A stretch of 64,000 nucleotides of DNA, from sequence record MT586120.1; one strand, written 5' to 3'. Under the pieces are notes generated by a model that ran no database searches, was not told the DNA's origin, and saw only the letters and a list, made by a program, of their open reading frames with translations. This document shows positions 1,101 through 61,073 of the stretch, one piece after another; within the stretch, counting starts at the first letter, position 1, and each line of letters opens with the position of its first letter. A program made the position numbers and the translations under genes.

Positions 1101-3440
1101 ATGTCATACGAAATTAACGAAGTCGTCATTATTGACGGAAGTCGTAATATTGTAAACGCTGGTGTTGGTACTTTTACTAAAGTTCACCCAGCAGAATTAG
1201 AAGTTGGAACCTCAGGACTAGCTATCTCTGATGTTCTAAACGAGACAGATCTAAGTAGTGATAGTGCATCAGCACTACCTACCCAACACGCCGTTAAGGC
1301 ATATGTTGATGCTGCAATCTCAACTGTTCAGTCAGATATAGATGCTAATGAACTAGCTTCCGACAACGCAGAATCTGCTTTGTCTGGTCGTCTAGACACT
1401 CTAGAAGCTGATCCAACAACAGCAACTGCTCTAGCAGCAGTTCAGGCTGATGTGGATGCCAATGAACTAGCTTCCGATAATGCTGAATCAGCATTGTCTG
1501 GTCGCCTAGACACCCTTGAGGCTGATCCAACAACTCAGACTCTATTGACTGCCGAGGCAAGTGCCCGCACTAGTGCGGATTCAGCATTGTCTGGTCGCCT
1601 AGACACCCTTGAGGCTGATCCAACAACTCAGACTCTATTGACTGCCGAGGCAACTACTAGAGCTTCTGCAGATGCGTCCGAGACTTCAGCTCGTCAAGTT
1701 GCAGATAATGCACTTTCTGGTCGCCTAGACACACTTGAGGCAGATCCAACAACCCAAACATTGTTGGATAGCGAAGCATCTACTCGCTCCGCTGCTGATG
1801 TTCTATTGAATGCGGCAGTTAGTAATGCTAATCTAGCTATTGCTGCTAACGAAGATCATATTGATAACCTAGCCACACTTTCTGGTGTTGCTAAAGATGC
1901 AGAAAATCTTGGTTCCTTCACTGGTTCCACGATTTCTGATAACATCACAATCAAAGCTGCTCTACAAGATCTAGAGACTGGTGTTGATAACGCTCTTGGT
2001 GGTGGCGCTGCTGCTTCTTCTGTAGAGACAGTCACACTATCTACTGATGCTACTCACTATCTAACGTTTGTTAACGCAGACAACGGTACAGGCACTCAGG
2101 AGAATCTCTATACCGATGCTGGTATCCAGTACAACCCATCATCCGACATTCTAACTGTTGGTGAAGTTGTTATCTCAGGTAACCTAACCGTTAATGGTAC
2201 TCAAACCATTTTCGATACTACGGTTATTCAGGCACAGGATAAGAACATCACTCTTGGTGTTACTACTGCTCCTACTGATGCTGGTGCAGACGGTGGTGGT
2301 TTGACCCTTATGGGAACCACTAACAAGACCTTTAACTGGATCAATGCAACTGATGCTTTCACAGCTTCAGAGCACATCAGCATTGCTGCTGGTAAGGAGT
2401 ATCGTATCGATGGCGTTAAAGTTATCGAGTCCGGCGCTCTAGGTGCATCCATTGTTAGTTCATCACTACAGACTGTTGGAACTCTTGCTAGTCTAACTGT
2501 TTCTGGTGATATTACAGCTAATGGAAACATCACTGGTGATAACTTTACAGATATCACTGGCATCAGAACGATGCACTCTCAGTTCATTACGATTGATAAT
2601 GTCAATCTAACTGCTAGTGCTACTGAGCTTAACTATCTAGATGGCTCCACTCCAGGTGCTGCAACTGCTGGTAATGCAGTAGTACTAGACTCTAGTAAAG
2701 ATGTAACTGGTATCAACCAGCTACAGGCTACTTCACTAGTTGGTGAGCTTACAGGTAATGCTGATTCTTCTGATCAGGTTAAGACAGTAAGAGTCACCAC
2801 AAATAGTGCTCACTATCTAACTTTCGTTGATGGTGATAATAGTAGTCAGACTAATGAGGAACTAAACACCTCACTACTAGCAACCTTCAATCCTTCTGAC
2901 GGTAGCCTAGTAGCTAACAAGCTAACTGCATCTAGCAACTTCTACCTAGGTCTAACCGAGGTTACTGCTAGCGGAACCGAGCTAAACTACCTAGATGGCT
3001 CACTAACCGGAACCGCAGTTGCTTCCAAGGCAGTTGTTCTAGATGCTAGCAAGGACATCGCAGGTATCAATAACATTGATATCGCTGGTGACCTAGTTGG
3101 TGATGGCGCATCTAACATCAGTGGTATCAACACAGTTACTGCTGCTGGTAAGATGTATGCTCTATCATACACCTCTACTTCTGACGCTTCCCTAAAGGAA
3201 AACGTTGAGAAGATTGAAGGTGCTGTTGAGAAAGTTGAAGCCATCCGTGGTGTAACTTTCGACTGGAAAGATGGTTCTGGCTCTACTGCTGGTATCATCG
3301 CTCAAGAAGTTGAAGCAGTAATGCCGATGCTAGTTGAGAGTGGCGAGATCAAGCGCGTTGATTACAACGGGTTAGTCGGTCTTCTTATTGAAGCCGTCAA
3401 GGAACTCTCTGCTGAAGTCAAAGAGCTAAAAGCTAACTGA
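1101..3440 (+). CDS. Tail fibre protein with S74 chaperone domain
   Basis: 779 aa, Ala/Thr/Ser/Gly-rich, with internal repeats; C-terminal TSDASLKENV...IRGVTFDW...GIIAQEVE...VDYNGLVGLLIEAVKEL. Confidence 0.8.
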   Translation: MSYEINEVVIIDGSRNIVNAGVGTFTKVHPAELEVGTSGLAISDVLNETDLSSDSASALPTQHAVKAYVDAAISTVQSDIDANELASDNAESALSGRLDTLEADPTTATALAAVQADVDANELASDNAESALSGRLDTLEADPTTQTLLTAEASARTSADSALSGRLDTLEADPTTQTLLTAEATTRASADASETSARQVADNALSGRLDTLEADPTTQTLLDSEASTRSAADVLLNAAVSNANLAIAANEDHIDNLATLSGVAKDAENLGSFTGSTISDNITIKAALQDLETGVDNALGGGAAASSVETVTLSTDATHYLTFVNADNGTGTQENLYTDAGIQYNPSSDILTVGEVVISGNLTVNGTQTIFDTTVIQAQDKNITLGVTTAPTDAGADGGGLTLMGTTNKTFNWINATDAFTASEHISIAAGKEYRIDGVKVIESGALGASIVSSSLQTVGTLASLTVSGDITANGNITGDNFTDITGIRTMHSQFITIDNVNLTASATELNYLDGSTPGAATAGNAVVLDSSKDVTGINQLQATSLVGELTGNADSSDQVKTVRVTTNSAHYLTFVDGDNSSQTNEELNTSLLATFNPSDGSLVANKLTASSNFYLGLTEVTASGTELNYLDGSLTGTAVASKAVVLDASKDIAGINNIDIAGDLVGDGASNISGINTVTAAGKMYALSYTSTSDASLKENVEKIEGAVEKVEAIRGVTFDWKDGSGSTAGIIAQEVEAVMPMLVESGEIKRVDYNGLVGLLIEAVKELSAEVKELKAN
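1341..1760 (+). repeat. Intragenic tandem repeats encoding LSGRLDTLEADPTT (four copies)
   Basis: About 70 nt identical at 1491-1560 and 1584-1653 (93-nt period); near-identical DANELASDNAESA unit at 1341 and 1455 (114-nt period). Confidence 0.9.
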
Positions 3441-14307: not shown

Positions 14308-15438
14308 GTGGCTTCTTTATCCGGCAACTCTACTAATGGTATCCCAAACTGGGACAAGTATGTAAAAAACCAGAATAGCTTGAGTAGTATTAAGTATGAT
14401 ATCGAAAAGCCAGCCTTTTTATATAAAGGAATTTCAAATACAAAGGAAAGTGATATTTTAGGTCTTCTTCCTGTAGGGACGCTGGTTAATATAGTATCCC
14501 CTACCATATATAATATTAGTGTATCTAAAGGTGCGGGAAAGGCATTCAGTAGTAAGCCAGCAGCTAAAGTTAGATATGATGGAAAATCTGGTTATGTCTT
14601 AATTACATTAATTAGAAAGCCTACAAAGGCTCCTGATTCCGTAGAAAAGAGGACGATTGATATAACACAAACAACTTTAAATTCATACAAGCAAGTTTCT
14701 GGTGTAGGTAGAGGTCCTAAAGCTGGTATTAATATTGAAGTTGAAGGTGTTGGTGTAATACAAAATGTATCTACAGTATCTAAAGTCCCCGAGAGAGTGA
14801 ATAATAGAGAAGCAAAAGCTGATATTGTTTTGAAGGATACGAAAGGTACACCATTATTCTACATATCACACAAGGCGGGTGGTGGTGCCAAGGCTTTCCA
14901 GCAGTATGGTGGTGTATCTAAAAAAGCAGGAAGTAGAAGCAATCCCGCATTGATATATAATGATCCAGAGACACAGCAATATTTGAACGACCTTTGGAAT
15001 TTTTACCAGGATGCCCTAGCAGGAGCACTACAATATGGAGAGGCTAATCCATTTAAGTCAGATGGTCTTCTAAAATACGGTAGGATATACAGGTTTGTAA
15101 AATCAGACGAACTTATTGGTAAGGCAGTATTTGGACCTGATTATGGTGGAGCATTTGGTATTGACAATGTAAACCTAATCGGTCAAGGTAATTTCCTATT
15201 CAAGCCATATATGAATTCCGAGGAAGACATTGCTATTAGACTTAGATTTGAAAACTTTGAAATTAACGGAGATATATCCGAGTTTAGAAAGGGTGACTAT
15301 AGGGCAATCTTTGTATCCAGGTCTTCCTCAGATAGGAAAACTGAAACACCGTCTGGTAATATTCCAAAACTTAGGACTGGTATATTCAATATGTCTTACC
15401 TATCTGGTCAGTCCGAAAACATTGACGCCCTACTCTAA
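14308..15438 (+). CDS. Putative PD-(D/E)xK (restriction-endonuclease-like) nuclease
   Basis: KADIVL...YISHK...FQQYGG motif; AT-rich codon style. Confidence 0.45.
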   Translation: MASLSGNSTNGIPNWDKYVKNQNSLSSIKYDIEKPAFLYKGISNTKESDILGLLPVGTLVNIVSPTIYNISVSKGAGKAFSSKPAAKVRYDGKSGYVLITLIRKPTKAPDSVEKRTIDITQTTLNSYKQVSGVGRGPKAGINIEVEGVGVIQNVSTVSKVPERVNNREAKADIVLKDTKGTPLFYISHKAGGGAKAFQQYGGVSKKAGSRSNPALIYNDPETQQYLNDLWNFYQDALAGALQYGEANPFKSDGLLKYGRIYRFVKSDELIGKAVFGPDYGGAFGIDNVNLIGQGNFLFKPYMNSEEDIAIRLRFENFEINGDISEFRKGDYRAIFVSRSSSDRKTETPSGNIPKLRTGIFNMSYLSGQSENIDALL

Positions 15439-19315: not shown

Positions 19316-19389
19316 GCCTCAGTAGCTCAGTGGAATAGAGCATCGCTCTTCTAAAGCGTGTTGCGCTGGTTCGAATCCAGCCTGAGGCG
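19316..19389 (+). tRNA. tRNA-Arg(TCT)
   Basis: GCCTCAG/CTGAGGC acceptor stem; loop CT-TCT-AA; GCTGG-TTCGAAT-CCAGC T arm. Confidence 0.9.
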
Positions 19390-19923: not shown

Positions 19924-19964
19924 TTGACAATCATCACCTTCTCTGGTATGATTGTTTCATCTTC

Positions 19965-20037
19965 GGGGAATTAGCTCAGTTGGTAGAGCGCCTGCTTTGC
20001 AAGCAGGATGTCAACGGTTCGAGTCCGTTATTCTCCA
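19965..20037 (+). tRNA. tRNA-Ala(TGC)
   Basis: GGGGAAT/ATTCTCC acceptor with G3:U70; loop TT-TGC-AA. Confidence 0.95.
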
Positions 20038-20077
20038 TTGACAATCATCACCTTCTCTGGTATGATTGTCTCATCTT

Positions 20078-20149
20078 CGGGGTGTAGCGCAGCGGTAGCG
20101 CATCGCTTTTGGGAAGCGAGGGTCGCAGGTTCGATCCCTGCCACCCCGA
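20078..20149 (+). tRNA. tRNA-Pro(TGG)
   Basis: CGGGGTG/CACCCCG acceptor stem; loop TT-TGG-GA. Confidence 0.93.
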
Positions 20150-20187
20150 TTGACAATCATCACCTTCTCTGGTATGATTGTCGCATA

Positions 20188-20314
20188 AGAGAAGCACCTG
20201 TTAGGATGGTGGTCGCCTAGAATTCAAGGTGGCAGAGGCGGATTACCTCCCGTCCGAGACGAAGCGTTTAAGTTAGTCCTTTGGTAAATGGCAGTTCAAA
20301 TCTGCCCTTCTCTT
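20188..20314 (+). ncRNA. tRNA-like RNA with acceptor stem, T arm and expanded interior
   Basis: AGAGAAG/CTTCTCT stem and GGCAG-TTCAAAT-CTGCC T arm enclosing about 95 nt with at least four hairpins; no canonical anticodon loop. Confidence 0.7.
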
Positions 20315-20320
20315 AAAAAT

Positions 20321-20405
20321 GGAGAGGTGGTCGAGTGGTTTATGGCTCTGGTCTTGAAAACCAGCGAGGTGAAAGCCTCCGTGAGTTCAAATCTCACCCT
20401 CTCCG
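20321..20405 (+). tRNA. tRNA-Ser(TGA)
   Basis: GGAGAGG/CCTCTCC acceptor stem; loop CT-TGA-AA; long variable arm. Confidence 0.95.
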
Positions 20406-20409
20406 CTTT

Positions 20410-20512: not shown

Positions 20513-20586
20513 GGGGGATTAGTTCAGTGGCAAAACACCCGCCTCCGACGCGGGAGTCATCGGTTCGAGTCCGTTATTCTCCACCA
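20513..20586 (+). tRNA. tRNA with CCG (Arg) anticodon on an Ala-type body; CCA encoded
   Basis: GGGGGAT/ATTCTCC-A-CCA acceptor with G3:U70; CCCGC-CTCCGAC-GCGGG anticodon arm. Confidence 0.8.
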
Positions 20587-20679: not shown

Positions 20680-21204
20680 ATGGTAAATTCACACTACGAA
20701 TCAATCCTTTCTAATAGAATCATATTAGACCTCCAAGGATATGCGTATGAAGCTGATTATCAGCCCATTCAGCAAGAGTATATGGGGGAAATTTATCAGA
20801 GTGTGAGTGCCCATAGATTACCCAAAGCTCATCCATTAGAGAAGCATATTGTTAAGTCTTTTCTTGCCTTCAATAAAGAATATTTTAATTATGATCTATG
20901 GGGTTCATTTGAGATTCAATTTTTAAAATATACCCCAGGTGGTCATTACAATTGGCATTGTGACTATGGTATTTCAGAAGTAGGTGCTAGAAAGTTAAGT
21001 ATGTCTATCCAGTTAAGTTGTGCCTGGGATTATACTGGCGGCGACCTTCTCGTTAGAGATTGGCATAACAGAAAACAATATATCAGTAAAGAAATAGGTA
21101 ATGTAGTTGTGTTCGATTCTCGCGTTCCACATAAGGTAGAACCCATTGTTGATGGGGAAAGATACGCAATTGTTGCCTGGGCTCACGGTCCAGAACTACG
21201 CTAA
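20680..21204 (+). CDS. 2OG-Fe(II) oxygenase (prolyl-hydroxylase-like)
   Basis: WHCD...RKLSMS...HKVEP..DGERYAIVAW (HxD..H..R). The ORF-track start overlaps tRNA-Asn, so ATG 20680 is used. Confidence 0.88.
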   Translation: MVNSHYESILSNRIILDLQGYAYEADYQPIQQEYMGEIYQSVSAHRLPKAHPLEKHIVKSFLAFNKEYFNYDLWGSFEIQFLKYTPGGHYNWHCDYGISEVGARKLSMSIQLSCAWDYTGGDLLVRDWHNRKQYISKEIGNVVVFDSRVPHKVEPIVDGERYAIVAWAHGPELR

Positions 21205-31531: not shown

Positions 31532-31975
31532 ATGTCTAGGGAAGAACTTATTGAATTGGCACTACAAGGTTCTGTAATTGCAGAGCAAATCGAAGAATCT
31601 GCAGACATTTACATCGATATTGCAGAGCATCTACTAGCATCTGGTCACGCATCTACAATCGGAGAGATTGACGTAATCCTTAGGGGAATGACTGTTGAGT
31701 CTGCTTCTGGTATTTTGGATGCCGTAGAGGGCACTCGGACGCTCTCTGAGGGGCACAAAAAGATTGCTGCTGGATTGGAAGCTGACCCAGAGGGATATAT
31801 GGTACTGCGCCAGATAGCCACCGCAGAGAACGCTTGCCTGCGCATCAAGACTTACATTGGTGGAGACAAGATGCTCCAACTACCAGCGTGGGTTCAGGCT
31901 AAAATGTCTATCGCAGCTGCTGACCTAGATACTATTGCTGATTACTTACTATCAGATACAGAAGCTACTGAGTGA
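31532..31975 (+). CDS. Hypothetical late protein
   Basis: TAAATA upstream; LPAWVQAKM motif. Confidence 0.6.
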   Translation: MSREELIELALQGSVIAEQIEESADIYIDIAEHLLASGHASTIGEIDVILRGMTVESASGILDAVEGTRTLSEGHKKIAAGLEADPEGYMVLRQIATAENACLRIKTYIGGDKMLQLPAWVQAKMSIAAADLDTIADYLLSDTEATE

Positions 31976-38255: not shown

Positions 38256-38422
38256 TAAGTGGTGGAGTCAACTTGACCCTTATGCCCTTGTCGGATGGGC
38301 TTTATAAATGCCGACTGGCGCGTCGTATGCAAAGGTTTCTCACTCTTCCTTAAAGAGTGAGTGGTGCGGATGATTTCATCGCATGGTTTTGCGATTCCAT
38401 TTAAAGATCGTATGGCGAGCAT
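38256..38422 (+). ncRNA. wcaG-RNA-like structured RNA in tandem form
   Basis: Four UGGYG motifs (38260, 38316, 38362, 38413) with intervening hairpins and pseudoknot pairings; lies upstream of the gmd/wcaG island. Identity with the wcaG motif is from recall. Confidence 0.6.
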
Positions 38423-38449
38423 GTTAATATACCCAATCATTTTTTGATG

Positions 38450-60578: not shown

Positions 60579-61073
60579 ATGTATACACACAACGAACATC
60601 CTGGGTTCTACGATAAGTGGTTTAAGATTTGGTCTGACTGCACCCCAGAAGTACTAGACGCCACTGCTATTATCCGTGTAATGGAATGCACTAATGGTTG
60701 CGTTCAGTATGGTTTTCGTGGAGAAAGCCCCAACGCACTATCGGTAGAACAGACCCGTGAGTGTATGAAGGTCTCTATGGGGGCTATAAAGAGCAAGAAG
60801 CTGCCTCTACCAACAGGGGAGGTAATCTATATGCCCGAAGAAGCAATCCCCCTTATGAACGAAGCTAGGGACCTCTACCAGAAAATGAAGGCAAGAGACA
60901 TTGATGCTTATGATGAGTTCTTTGCTCTATCCACAGCACACTTCCATGTCCTAGGCAAGAAGATTATTGACGAGAAGTTTGCATTCTTAACAGAACATTT
61001 TGGTGATGTCTTCACTGAGTATTGGATTGATAGGGGTAGGGAGTATATCTATGATGCTCTAAGTCCAGCCTAA
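60579..61073 (+). CDS. Hypothetical protein
   Basis: 164-aa ORF with the phage codon style. Confidence 0.65.
   Translation: MYTHNEHPGFYDKWFKIWSDCTPEVLDATAIIRVMECTNGCVQYGFRGESPNALSVEQTRECMKVSMGAIKSKKLPLPTGEVIYMPEEAIPLMNEARDLYQKMKARDIDAYDEFFALSTAHFHVLGKKIIDEKFAFLTEHFGDVFTEYWIDRGREYIYDALSPA

What the first reader, a model, noticed from the sequence alone, without database searches (positions are those of the whole stretch)
20188..20314. 127-nt tRNA-like RNA with an expanded multi-hairpin core in a tRNA slot
Seen: behind the third promoter repeat, where the other two repeats have a tRNA, lies an RNA closed by AGAGAAG/CTTCTCT (extendable to 8-9 bp) stacked on a canonical T arm GGCAG-TTCAAAT-CTGCC. 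The interior has a D-like hairpin CACC/GGTG with a GG-containing loop (20195-20211), GTCGCC/GGTGGC (20212-20233, loop TAGAATTCAA), GAGG/CCTC (20235-20249), CGTC/GACG (20251-20261) and an approximately 28-nt unpaired stretch. There is no standard 7-nt anticodon loop. Established: acceptor/T-arm mimics are substrates for RNase P, RNase Z and CCA-adding enzyme (tmRNA, Y RNAs, viral tRNA-like structures). Inference: a processed, stable tRNA-mimic ncRNA of unknown function, such as a decoy for tRNA-targeting defences or a synthetase/EF-Tu ligand. The possible 8/5 acceptor/T fold and a TCA in one loop recall tRNA-Sec, but the loop geometry does not fit.
Basis: partly seen in the sequence, partly recalled or inferred. 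Interest (0 to 1): 0.75.

Follow-up and report, generated by a model that had tools for sequence, protein, structure and literature searches.

The report
Conserved tRNA-shaped RNA in cyanophage tRNA array
A marine cyanophage carries, among its tRNA genes and behind the same strong promoter, a conserved 127-base gene for an RNA that has the ends of a tRNA but no anticodon loop; it is a cyanophage counterpart of the still unexplained 'species 1' RNA of phage T4.

Summary
Window 20188-20314 (+), in Synechococcus phage S-CAM7, has a perfect 7 bp closing stem (extendable to 9), a canonical T arm, a D-like hairpin with GG, and extra hairpins. It lies behind the third copy of a near-consensus promoter; the other two copies drive tRNA-Ala and tRNA-Pro. 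ARAGORN and Rfam find nothing.

I found 20 copies with 8 haplotypes: two of three S-CAM7 isolates, the unrelated phage S-SKS1, and 17 uncultured marine contigs, one with S-TIM5-like flanks. Every copy has the promoter upstream and sits in a tRNA array, but with varying neighbours. Only 8 of 127 sites vary, against 9 of 38 in its own promoter (p=0.0045), and conservation stops sharply at the stem ends. It is as conserved as the neighbouring tRNAs, so it is not a decaying remnant.

Structural support is thermodynamic plus four pair-preserving one-sided changes. There is no compensatory covariation, and no divergent homologue was found.

The closest known thing is T4 species 1 RNA (rnaC), which shares the design but not the sequence and has no known function. 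The most likely reading is a non-decoding tRNA mimic matured by the tRNA-processing enzymes. A decoy role is inference only.

The parts
20150..20178 (+). Sigma-70-type promoter cassette: TTGACA, 17 nt spacer, TATGAT, with TG before the -10 hexamer. It is the third of three repeats in the window.
   Evidence: 11 of 12 hexamer matches; the same cassette at 19924 and 20038; the cassette lies directly upstream of all 20 copies of the element, and elsewhere upstream of tRNA-Pro or tRNA-Ala.
20179..20187 (+). Initial transcribed region and short leader (TGTCGCATA). The expected start is near A20185, which leaves a leader of about 3 nt. Only position 20183 varies (G/C/T).
   Evidence: The start site is inferred from the usual -10 to +1 spacing and was not measured.
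20188..20314 (+). The tRNA-like RNA gene: 127 nt including the putative discriminator T20314.
   Evidence: There are 20 copies of exactly 127 nt, with 8 variable sites and no indels.
20188..20194 (+). 5' strand of the acceptor-like stem (AGAGAAG). It pairs with 20307-20313.
   Evidence: Invariant in all copies. Ensemble pairing probability 0.95.
20195..20211 (+). D-like hairpin CACC/GGTG with a 9-nt loop, UGUUAGGAU, that contains GG. No 2-nt linker separates it from the acceptor stem.
   Evidence: P 0.97. The G/A polymorphism at 20200 lies in the loop.
20212..20233 (+). Hairpin 2: a 7 bp stem (with U-G and G-U pairs) and the 8-nt loop AGAAUUCA, a GAAUUC palindrome flanked by A on each side. 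It occupies the anticodon-arm position but has no 7-nt anticodon loop.
   Evidence: P 0.94-0.99. G20215A changes G-U to A-U in one contig (L026). The A20226G polymorphism lies in the loop.
20237..20254 (+). Hairpin 3: a 5 bp stem GRCGG/CCGUC with the loop AUUACCUC. The stretch GGAUUACCUCC resembles the 3' tail of 16S rRNA.
   Evidence: G20238A changes G-U to A-U. (P 0.36 in the window haplotype, 0.83 in the commonest one). The 16S resemblance is about a 1% event and was noticed post hoc.
20255..20289 (+). Distal region with one long interrupted hairpin or two short ones, followed by a 5-nt linker before the T arm. The register is unresolved.
   Evidence: The polymorphisms at 20264 (G/A) and 20285 (T/C) each fit a different alternative.
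20290..20306 (+). Canonical T arm GGCAG-UUCRAAU-CUGCC.
   Evidence: The A/G polymorphism at 20298 falls at the purine-variable T-loop position. C20305T keeps the pair as G-U.
20307..20314 (+). 3' strand of the acceptor-like stem (CUUCUCU) plus the putative discriminator U. No CCA is encoded.
   Evidence: The neighbouring tRNA genes read here (Ala, Pro, Ser) likewise encode no CCA after the discriminator.
20315..20406 (+). A 6-nt variable spacer followed by tRNA-Ser(TGA), probably co-transcribed with the element. No terminator lies between them.
   Evidence: The spacer varies between copies from the second base after the discriminator.

Best explanation
This is a gene for a non-decoding, tRNA-shaped stable RNA that belongs to the phage's tRNA array.

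Proposed mechanism:
1. Host RNA polymerase starts at the element's own near-consensus promoter and probably reads on into tRNA-Ser, Thr, Arg and Asn.
2. The RNA folds so that its two ends form a 7 bp acceptor-like stem stacked on a canonical T arm. The GG of the D-like loop is available to dock on the T loop.
3. That minihelix is the feature recognised by RNase P, by the 3' trimming enzymes and by the CCA-adding enzyme. The RNA would therefore be cut out of the precursor and finished like its tRNA neighbours.
4. The anticodon arm is replaced by a 7 bp / 8 nt hairpin, and two or three extra hairpins are inserted. It therefore cannot read codons in the normal way.
5. I think it most likely works as a tRNA mimic. 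It would occupy or distract a protein that recognises the tRNA elbow or acceptor end, such as a tRNA-directed host nuclease, a modifying toxin or a synthetase. The conserved extra loops would be the specific contact surface.

What is shown: the gene, its conservation, its promoter, its placement and its tRNA-like ends.
What is inferred: transcription, processing, stability, and above all the decoy function.
For: Sequence features:
- Perfect closing stem, T arm and D-like GG loop.
- It is the only orphan site of this kind in 64 kb, against 0.23 expected.
- Strand-specific fold with G-U pairs.
- The promoter cassette is identical to those driving tRNA-Ala and tRNA-Pro, and it precedes all 20 copies.

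Distribution:
- It is always inside a tRNA array but with changing neighbours. Upstream it has Ala, Pro or Asn; downstream it has Ser, Gln or Leu.
- It occurs in S-CAM7 (Kyanoviridae), S-SKS1 (Llyrvirus) and a contig with S-TIM5-like flanks.

Conservation:
- 8 of 127 sites vary, against 9 of 38 in the adjoining promoter (p=0.0045), or 8 of 26 promoter sites outside the hexamers (p=0.0013).
- The trailer varies from the second base after the discriminator.
- S-CAM7 against S-SKS1: element 96.1% identical, against 91.8-98.8% for four shared tRNAs and 89.5% for the promoter.
- All 4 substitutions in predicted stems keep the pair, and the other 4 lie in loops or linkers.

Not a decoder: no call from ARAGORN at default or lowered thresholds (-ps, -ps95), with or without introns allowed, nor as tmRNA, and none from Rfam's tRNA, tRNA-Sec or tmRNA models at E up to 10.

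Precedent:
- T4 rnaC is 139 nt, lies in the T4 tRNA cluster, and has a T arm next to a terminal closing stem.
- It is a validated transcript whose function is still unknown.

Context for the decoy idea: tRNA-targeting defences, and phage tRNAs that evade them, are documented (PMC10264068, PMC11555353). tRNA supply decides cyanophage resistance in a marine Synechococcus (PMC11726456).
Against: - There is no expression, end-mapping or binding data.
- There is no compensatory covariation. 4 of 4 pair-preserving transitions has a chance probability of about 0.1.
- The family is narrow and nearly invariant, so recent horizontal spread of the whole tRNA cassette explains part of the conservation.
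- The D-like stem abuts the acceptor stem without the usual two linker bases, so an L-shaped fold is not guaranteed.
- The predicted leader is only about 3 nt, so the 5' end may come from initiation rather than from RNase P.
- One S-CAM7 isolate (0910CC49) lacks the element together with four tRNAs and is viable, so the element is accessory.
- Nothing identifies a target for a decoy.
Confidence: 0.55

Rival explanations
1. It is an unusual but chargeable tRNA relative, perhaps derived from the adjacent type II tRNA-Ser. It would be aminoacylated and used either for non-standard decoding or as an amino-acid donor.
For: - Its acceptor and T arm are closest to the neighbouring tRNA-Ser(TGA): 23 of 31 positions by hand count after correcting register, against at most 20 for 106 other tRNAs. 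Both acceptor differences are compensated.
- MAFFT aligns it collinearly with tRNA-Ser. The GAGG...CCUCC stretch falls on the Ser variable arm, and a roughly 38-nt block appears as an insertion before the T arm.
- SerRS ignores the anticodon (established knowledge).
- The loop contains UUCAA, as in tRNA-Sec and opal-suppressor loops.
Against: - Interior similarity to tRNA-Ser is not significant (377 of 1000 shuffles score as well).
- No 7-nt anticodon loop can be drawn around UCA.
- ARAGORN still finds no tRNA after in-silico removal of the insert.
- No tRNA or tRNA-Sec model hit at E up to 10.
- The discriminator is U, not the G of tRNA-Ser.
- The six same-frame ORF junctions in the window are not evidence of read-through: the four in the annotated part I fetched are boundaries between separately annotated genes; the other two were not inspected.
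Confidence: 0.12
2. It is a base-pairing or loop-loop regulatory RNA that uses a tRNA scaffold only for excision and stability. Its active parts would be the AUUACCUC loop, which resembles the anti-Shine-Dalgarno sequence, or the palindromic GAAUUC loop.
For: - GGAUUACCUCC matches the 16S 3' tail GGAUCACCUCC at 10 of 11 positions. 15 of 3000 shuffles and 11 of 1006 window segments do as well.
- An 11-mer complementary to this loop lies at window 60817-60827.
- The 6-nt palindrome flanked by A in an 8-nt loop has the form of a kissing-dimer loop.
- These loops are invariant in all copies.
Against: - The 16S match was noticed post hoc, and the reference was recalled from memory.
- The 38-nt comparison with helix 45 plus the tail is not significant (153 of 3000 shuffles).
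- No complementary match longer than 12 nt occurs elsewhere in the window, and the number of 11-12-mers is near expectation.
- The metagenome search pattern itself required AGAATTC, so the invariance of that loop is partly an effect of how copies were found.
Confidence: 0.15
3. It is a hitch-hiking relic: a tRNA gene disrupted by insertions that persists only because the whole tRNA cassette spread recently among cyanophages.
For: - All copies are at least 95% identical and no divergent homologue exists.
- There is no compensatory covariation.
- It is dispensable in isolate 0910CC49.
Against: - It is significantly less variable than its own adjoining promoter.
- There are no indels in 20 copies.
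- The boundaries of conservation are sharp.
- It is retained, always with a promoter, while its neighbours are reshuffled across at least six array architectures and three phage lineages.
- The closing stem and T arm are perfect.
Confidence: 0.08
4. It is a cis-acting first module of the Ser-Thr-Arg-Asn precursor. It would act as a structured 5' cap or an entry site for processing enzymes and have no role in trans.
For: - It is the first unit behind the promoter.
- Only 6 nt separate it from tRNA-Ser.
- No terminator follows.
Against: - The same promoter drives tRNA-Ala and tRNA-Pro directly, without such a module.
- The downstream gene differs between copies (Ser, Gln, Leu).
- Sequence conservation of the loops is not needed for a mere cap.
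Confidence: 0.07
5. It is an intron-containing tRNA-Leu(UAA), as ARAGORN proposes when its threshold is lowered to 80% and introns are allowed.
For:: ARAGORN with -ps80 -i reports tRNA-Leu(taa) with a 47-nt intron, spanning 20187-20315.
Against: - There is no call at default or 95% thresholds.
- The proposed anticodon stem has a mismatch, and the D stem is mostly G-U.
- The 'intron' enters before the loop rather than after position 37.
- 47 nt is far too short for a bacterial group I intron.
- The G20215A variant would break this model's stem but improves hairpin 2.
Confidence: 0.02

Closest known systems
Bacteriophage T4 species 1 RNA (rnaC / RNA C)
   Same: - It is encoded inside a phage tRNA cluster and is of similar size (139 against 127 nt).
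- It has a canonical T arm (CCGGG-UUCGAAU-CCCGG) immediately before a 7-nt 3' strand that pairs with the 5' end.
- Its core has several hairpins and no anticodon loop.
- Rfam has no family for it.
- Its function is unknown.
   Different: - There is no detectable sequence or covariance-model similarity.
- The T4 closing stem has two U-U mismatches.
- T4 rnaC lacks an obvious D-like GG hairpin.
- T4 RNA C is classed as a late RNA (PMC9697503), whereas this element has an early-type sigma-70 promoter.
- The hosts and phage lineages are unrelated.
Type II tRNAs (tRNA-Ser) and tRNA-Sec
   Same: - Acceptor stem, T arm and a D loop with GG.
- A long region between the 'anticodon' hairpin and the T arm.
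- The acceptor and T arm are most like the adjacent tRNA-Ser(TGA).
- An 8-9 bp acceptor is possible, as in tRNA-Sec.
   Different: - No 7-nt anticodon loop.
- A 7 bp stem with an 8-nt loop.
- No linker at positions 8-9.
- 56 nt instead of at most about 22 nt between the arms.
- No hit to RF00005 or RF01852 at E up to 10.
tmRNA tRNA-like domain, including phage-borne tmRNA genes
   Same: - An acceptor/T-arm mimic that is matured like a tRNA.
- Another cyanophage, Sf-FS3, carries a permuted tmRNA gene in its tRNA cluster.
   Different: - No G3-U70 pair.
- No tag reading frame.
- No pseudoknots.
- Far too short.
- ARAGORN's tmRNA mode finds nothing.
Bacterial Y RNA YrlA (partner of Ro/Rsr)
   Same: A non-coding RNA with a tRNA-like module (T arm, D arm) that is thought to engage tRNA enzymes (own knowledge; PMC7824862 mentions phage Ro proteins with a tRNA-like partner).
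   Different: - In YrlA the RNA ends form the Ro-binding stem and the tRNA-like part is internal. Here the ends form the acceptor stem.
- No Rfam hit.
- I did not look for a Ro/TROVE gene in this phage.

Membership tests
Canonical tRNA (Rfam RF00005) | Cloverleaf with a 5 bp anticodon stem and a 7-nt anticodon loop, detectable by tRNA finders. | tested here: not met
   ARAGORN at default and lowered thresholds (-ps, -ps95) gives no call. Rfam gives no call at the gathering threshold or at E up to 10. None appears even after in-silico deletion of the inserted block.
Canonical tRNA (Rfam RF00005) | 7 bp acceptor stem stacked on a 5 bp T stem with a UUCRANY T loop. | tested here: met
tRNA-Sec (RF01852) | 8/5 or 9/4 acceptor/T geometry, a 6 bp D stem with a 4-nt loop, and a UCA anticodon in a 7-nt loop. 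| tested here: not met
   An 8-9 bp acceptor is possible. But the D stem has 4 bp with a 9-nt loop, UCA lies off-centre in an 8-nt loop, and there is no RF01852 hit at E up to 10.
tmRNA | G3-U70 pair, a tag-peptide frame with a resume codon, and pseudoknots. | tested here: not met
   The third pair is A3-U70. ARAGORN -m finds nothing. No Rfam tmRNA hit.
Intron-containing tRNA | Joining the exons gives a normal cloverleaf, and the intron lies at the canonical anticodon-loop site with a known splicing mechanism. | tested here: not met
   The only call comes at -ps80 and has a mismatched stem and a non-canonical insertion point. The G20215A variant contradicts it.
T4 species 1 RNA (rnaC) type of phage tRNA-cluster stable RNA | Located within a phage tRNA gene cluster, on the same strand as the tRNAs. 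| tested here: met
T4 species 1 RNA (rnaC) type of phage tRNA-cluster stable RNA | About 120-140 nt, with a terminal closing stem adjoining a canonical T arm and a core that is not an anticodon arm. | tested here: met
T4 species 1 RNA (rnaC) type of phage tRNA-cluster stable RNA | Sequence or profile homology to T4 rnaC. | tested here: not met
   Covariance model R1 finds nothing in the T4 locus. blastn of the element finds only its own near-identical copies.
T4 species 1 RNA (rnaC) type of phage tRNA-cluster stable RNA | Accumulates as a discrete stable RNA excised from the tRNA precursor. | not testable with these tools
   No transcript data are available here. The T4 RNA is validated by Northern blot (PMC9697503).
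Bacterial Y RNA (YrlA) | The 5' and 3' ends form a Ro-binding helix, the tRNA-like module is internal, and a Ro/Rsr gene is present. | tested here: not met
   The ends form the acceptor stem, and there is no Rfam hit. The presence of a Ro gene was not tested.

The most novel reading that the evidence does not exclude
The element would be the first tractable example of a class of phage 'tRNA-array riders': tRNA-shaped RNAs that do not decode. Instead they would neutralise a host factor that attacks or measures tRNAs, for instance a nuclease or nucleotidyltransferase toxin that recognises the acceptor end or elbow. Alternatively they would be charged and used off the ribosome. If so, it would also suggest what the 50-year-old T4 species 1 RNA does.
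Probability: 0.2. Interest if true: 0.8.

Novelty: new variant of a known kind. Interest (0 to 1): 0.55.

Why it matters
Phage tRNA genes are being reinterpreted as weapons against tRNA-targeting bacterial immunity, and tRNA supply has been shown to decide cyanophage resistance in marine Synechococcus. A strongly conserved, promoter-equipped, non-decoding tRNA look-alike travels with tRNA cassettes between unrelated cyanophages. That makes it a concrete candidate for an RNA-based counter-measure or regulator in one of the ocean's main virus-host systems.

It also shows that the T4 'species 1 RNA' design is not a T-even oddity. It recurs, without sequence homology, in marine phages. This offers a second system in which to ask what such RNAs do, and a natural deletion isolate (S-CAM7 0910CC49) is available for comparison.

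If the element turns out to be inert, the practical value is smaller: an unannotated RNA gene that should be added to cyanophage annotations and to Rfam.

Tried and rejected
Known families and alternative identities:
- Rfam at the gathering threshold and at E up to 10 gives nothing better than chance matches.
- ARAGORN was run in tRNA, intron, mitochondrial and tmRNA modes. The only call is at 80% threshold with an intron, and I rejected it.
- Cutting out the inserted block in silico (180 variants) gives no tRNA call.
- Protein coding is rejected: stops occur in all six frames.
- A minus-strand RNA is rejected: it folds worse and loses the G-U hairpin.

Search for divergent homologues:
- blastn of the element against 50,697 phage records at E up to 10 finds only four records, all at least 96% identical.
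- Five IMG/VR pattern scans, including loop-anchored and stem-free designs, find the same three contigs plus chance hits L009, L038 and L039.
- One metagenome scan finds 14 true copies, all near-identical, and 4 chance hits.
- One scan of 185,579 bacterial and archaeal genomes finds only 4 matches of the wrong spacing, none in cyanobacteria.
- Covariance model R1 was run over T4 and five other cyanophage tRNA clusters and finds nothing.
- A structural scan for other orphan 'T arm plus closing stem' sites in those clusters finds none. T4 rnaC itself is missed because of its two U-U mismatches.

Origin, targets and recoding:
- Derivation from tRNA-Ser is suggestive for the acceptor and T arm but not significant for the interior.
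- Mimicry of the 16S rRNA 3' end is about a 1% coincidence found post hoc, and I kept it only as a lead.
- Antisense targets in the window: none beyond chance. The three 12-mer hits are same-sense copies in a coding repeat.
- Stop-codon read-through genes that would call for a suppressor: of the six same-frame junctions, the four in the annotated region I fetched are ordinary gene boundaries; the two at 31973 and 48661 were not inspected.
- A neighbouring tRNA-processing enzyme: the nearby 'cytidylyltransferase' is of the CTP_transf_like type, not a CCA-adding enzyme.

Full report
**Where the window comes from.** The window is 100% identical to Synechococcus phage S-CAM7 isolate 0809CC03 (MT586120.1), a T4-like cyanomyovirus of the Kyanoviridae. 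Window position 1 corresponds to record position 124001. The finding lies in an unannotated 170-nt gap between tRNA-Pro (20077-20150) and tRNA-Ser (20321-20406), within a run of seven consecutive tRNA genes; an eighth tRNA lies about 460 nt upstream beyond two small ORFs.

- AGAGAAG (20188-20194) pairs perfectly with CTTCTCT (20307-20313). Two further pairs are possible outside this stem.
- The stem abuts a canonical T arm, GGCAG-TTCAAAT-CTGCC (20290-20306).
- A CACC/GGTG hairpin with a GG-containing 9-nt loop follows the 5' strand directly.
- Next comes a 7 bp hairpin with the 8-nt loop AGAATTCA.
- Three copies of a near-consensus promoter (TTGACA, 17 nt, TATGAT, with TG upstream) start at 19924, 20038 and 20150. 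They precede tRNA-Ala, tRNA-Pro and the element.
- A scan for T-arm motifs closed by a perfect 7 bp stem 95-260 nt upstream finds nine T arms in the window: eight in called tRNAs and this one. This is the only long-range closed orphan. Shuffled windows give 0.23.
- The + strand folds to -41.4 kcal/mol (z -2.06; z -2.46 for the commonest haplotype). The - strand folds worse and loses the G-U-containing hairpin.
- All six reading frames contain stops.

**It is not any catalogued RNA.**
- ARAGORN finds nothing in tRNA, intron, tmRNA or mitochondrial modes.
- Rfam 15 finds nothing at the gathering threshold or at E up to 10.
- ARAGORN reports a 'tRNA-Leu(taa) with a 47-nt intron' only at an 80% threshold with introns allowed. 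That model has a mismatched anticodon stem, a mostly G-U D stem and a non-canonical intron site. It is also contradicted by a natural variant.
- An Rfam miss is weak evidence of novelty. The long-known T4 species 1 RNA has no Rfam family either.

**Relatives.** I found 20 copies, all exactly 127 nt, in 8 haplotypes with 8 variable sites. All the changes are transitions and there are no indels.
- The copies are in S-CAM7 isolates 0809CC03 and 0910SB42, in S-SKS1, in three IMG/VR contigs and in 14 marine metagenome contigs.
- S-SKS1 is a Llyrvirus, outside the Kyanoviridae.
- One contig (L016) has flanks about 73% identical to S-TIM5-like cyanophages. Another (L014) resembles a different region of S-SKS1.
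- The third S-CAM7 isolate, 0910CC49, lacks the element together with tRNA-Pro, Ser, Thr and Arg. The 3' ends of tRNA-Ala and tRNA-Arg(CCG) share a 28-nt repeat (family D3). Recombination between these repeats would produce exactly this deletion; this is inference. The element is therefore accessory.
- No bacterial genome carries it.

**Evidence for selection.**
- Every copy has the promoter cassette immediately upstream.
- Every copy sits in a tRNA array, but the neighbours change. Upstream they are Ala, Pro or Asn; downstream they are Ser, Gln or Leu. There are at least six array architectures.
- Across the 20 copies the element has 8 variable sites in 127. Its own promoter has 9 in 38 (Fisher p=0.0045), or 8 in 26 outside the hexamers (p=0.0013).
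- The 3' trailer diverges from the second base after the discriminator.
- Between S-CAM7 and S-SKS1 the element is 96.1% identical. Four shared tRNAs are 91.8-98.8% identical and the promoter is 89.5%.

There are two caveats. The metagenome pattern fixed 21 positions, which slightly inflates apparent conservation. The promoter copies may also exchange by recombination. Even so, a decaying pseudogene is unlikely.

**Structure.** The RNAalifold consensus and ensemble probabilities support the following helices. Positions are numbered within the element; add 20187 for window coordinates.

| Helix | Element positions | Ensemble probability |
|---|---|---|
| Acceptor-like stem | 1-7 / 120-126 | 0.95 |
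| D-like hairpin | 8-11 / 21-24 | 0.97 |
| Hairpin 2 | 25-31 / 40-46 | 0.94-0.99 |
| Hairpin 3 (loop AUUACCUC) | 50-54 / 63-67 | 0.36 (window haplotype), 0.83 (commonest) |
| T arm | 103-107 / 115-119 | 0.51-0.86 |

- The region 68-102 has two competing folds.
- Four of the eight polymorphisms lie in predicted stems, and all four keep the pair (G-U to A-U three times, G-C to G-U once). The other four lie in loops or linkers, including the purine-variable position of the T loop.
- There is no compensatory double change, and 4 of 4 has a chance probability of about 0.1. Comparative support is therefore consistent but weak.
- All attempts to find more divergent homologues failed.

**Possible origin.** The acceptor and T arm are most like the adjacent tRNA-Ser(TGA). 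My hand count after register correction is 23 of 31 positions, with both acceptor differences compensated; other tRNAs reach at most 20. MAFFT lays the element collinearly on tRNA-Ser, with the GAGG...CCUCC stretch on the Ser variable arm and about 38 nt inserted before the T arm. The interior similarity is not significant. Descent from a duplicated type II tRNA is therefore a lead, not a result.

**How it probably works.**
- *Shown:* a conserved gene with tRNA ends, a tRNA-type promoter and a place in tRNA arrays.
- *From established knowledge:* RNase P, 3' trimming enzymes and the CCA-adding enzyme recognise the acceptor/T-arm minihelix. No CCA is encoded here or in the neighbouring tRNA genes whose 3' ends I read (Ala, Pro, Ser), so the host enzyme must add it.
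- *Inferred:* the RNA is excised and finished like a tRNA. Because it lacks a 7-nt anticodon loop and has a 7 bp 'anticodon' stem, it does not decode. It acts as a tRNA mimic whose invariant extra loops contact a partner.
- *Most likely partner, in my view:* a decoy or competitor role towards a tRNA-recognising host factor. tRNA-targeting defences and evading phage tRNAs are documented (PMC10264068, PMC11555353), and tRNA supply governs cyanophage resistance in Synechococcus (PMC11726456). Nothing here identifies the partner.
- *Rivals:* a chargeable unusual tRNA, a scaffolded base-pairing RNA, a cis-acting processing module, a relic, and an intron-containing tRNA. Each is scored in the rival section.

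**Comparison with what is known.** The nearest precedent is T4 species 1 RNA (rnaC).
- It is 139 nt and lies in the T4 tRNA cluster.
- A canonical T arm sits next to a terminal closing stem, around a multi-hairpin core.
- It is a validated transcript whose role is still unknown.
- The present element shares this design and placement but shows no detectable homology to it.

I therefore say it works like a T4 RNA C-type molecule and is a new, unrelated family of that kind. It fails the membership tests for tRNA, tRNA-Sec, tmRNA, intron-containing tRNA and YrlA.

**Verdict.** This is a real, unannotated, selected tRNA-like RNA gene. It is a new variant of a known kind and of moderate interest (0.55). 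Its function is open, and the proposed tests are straightforward in laboratory cyanophage-host pairs.

Noticed in passing
L035:3079-3406 (+) = Synechococcus phage Sf-FS3 PV340856.1, about 20801-21128: ARAGORN calls a permuted (two-piece) tmRNA gene inside this cyanophage's tRNA cluster. The tag is AKTSDVAANNIVAFSRTRELATA* and a G3-U70-type acceptor is present. The record does not annotate it. ARAGORN's second, overlapping tmRNA call at 2752-3169 looks spurious.
   Followed up: partly
L011:455-790 (also L015, L019, L005): A small ORF with an HNH-endonuclease-like motif is inserted right after a 5' fragment of tRNA-Ser(TGA), immediately downstream of the element. A complete tRNA-Ser follows. This recalls the homing endonuclease segB in the T4 tRNA cluster.
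   Followed up: partly
window 19316-19389 (+): ARAGORN and the GenBank record label this tRNA-Pyl(cta), which would be an amber suppressor. That model needs a mismatched 6-pair stem. The alternative stem CGCT/AGCG with loop CTTCTAA gives anticodon TCT (Arg), which is how the sister isolates annotate it. The suppressor label is probably an artefact.
   Followed up: partly
window 20010-20037 and 20556-20583: The 3' ends of tRNA-Ala and tRNA-Arg(CCG) share a 28-nt repeat, 96% identical. Recombination between the two copies would give exactly the array of S-CAM7 isolate 0910CC49, which lacks Pro, the element, Ser, Thr and Arg.
   Followed up: partly
window 38331-38426 (+): A full-length match to the wcaG RNA motif (RF01761, 77 bits), a cyanophage-associated cis-regulatory RNA candidate.
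   Followed up: no
window 1499-1510, 1592-1603, 1718-1729 (+): The 12-mer TGGTCGCCTAGA, identical to element positions 23-34, occurs three times in a repeat inside the 779-aa ORF 1101-3440. The copies are same-sense, so only a minus-strand transcript would be complementary to the element. This is probably chance multiplied by the repeat.
   Followed up: no
window 20165-20171 within the promoter spacer: The promoter spacer of the S-CAM7-type cassette contains CTTCTCT, the same heptamer as the element's 3' acceptor strand. A read-through transcript could therefore offer the 5' strand an alternative partner. S-SKS1-type cassettes have CACTTCT there instead, so this is probably coincidence.
   Followed up: no
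window 14308-15438 (+): The record annotates a CviJI-type type II restriction enzyme in this phage genome, between the gp41-like helicase and small hypothetical genes.
   Followed up: no
window 20240-20250 (+): GGATTACCTCC in hairpin 3 matches the universal 16S rRNA 3' tail GGATCACCTCC at 10 of 11 positions. This is about a 1% event in shuffles and in other window segments. It was noticed post hoc against a reference recalled from memory.
   Followed up: partly
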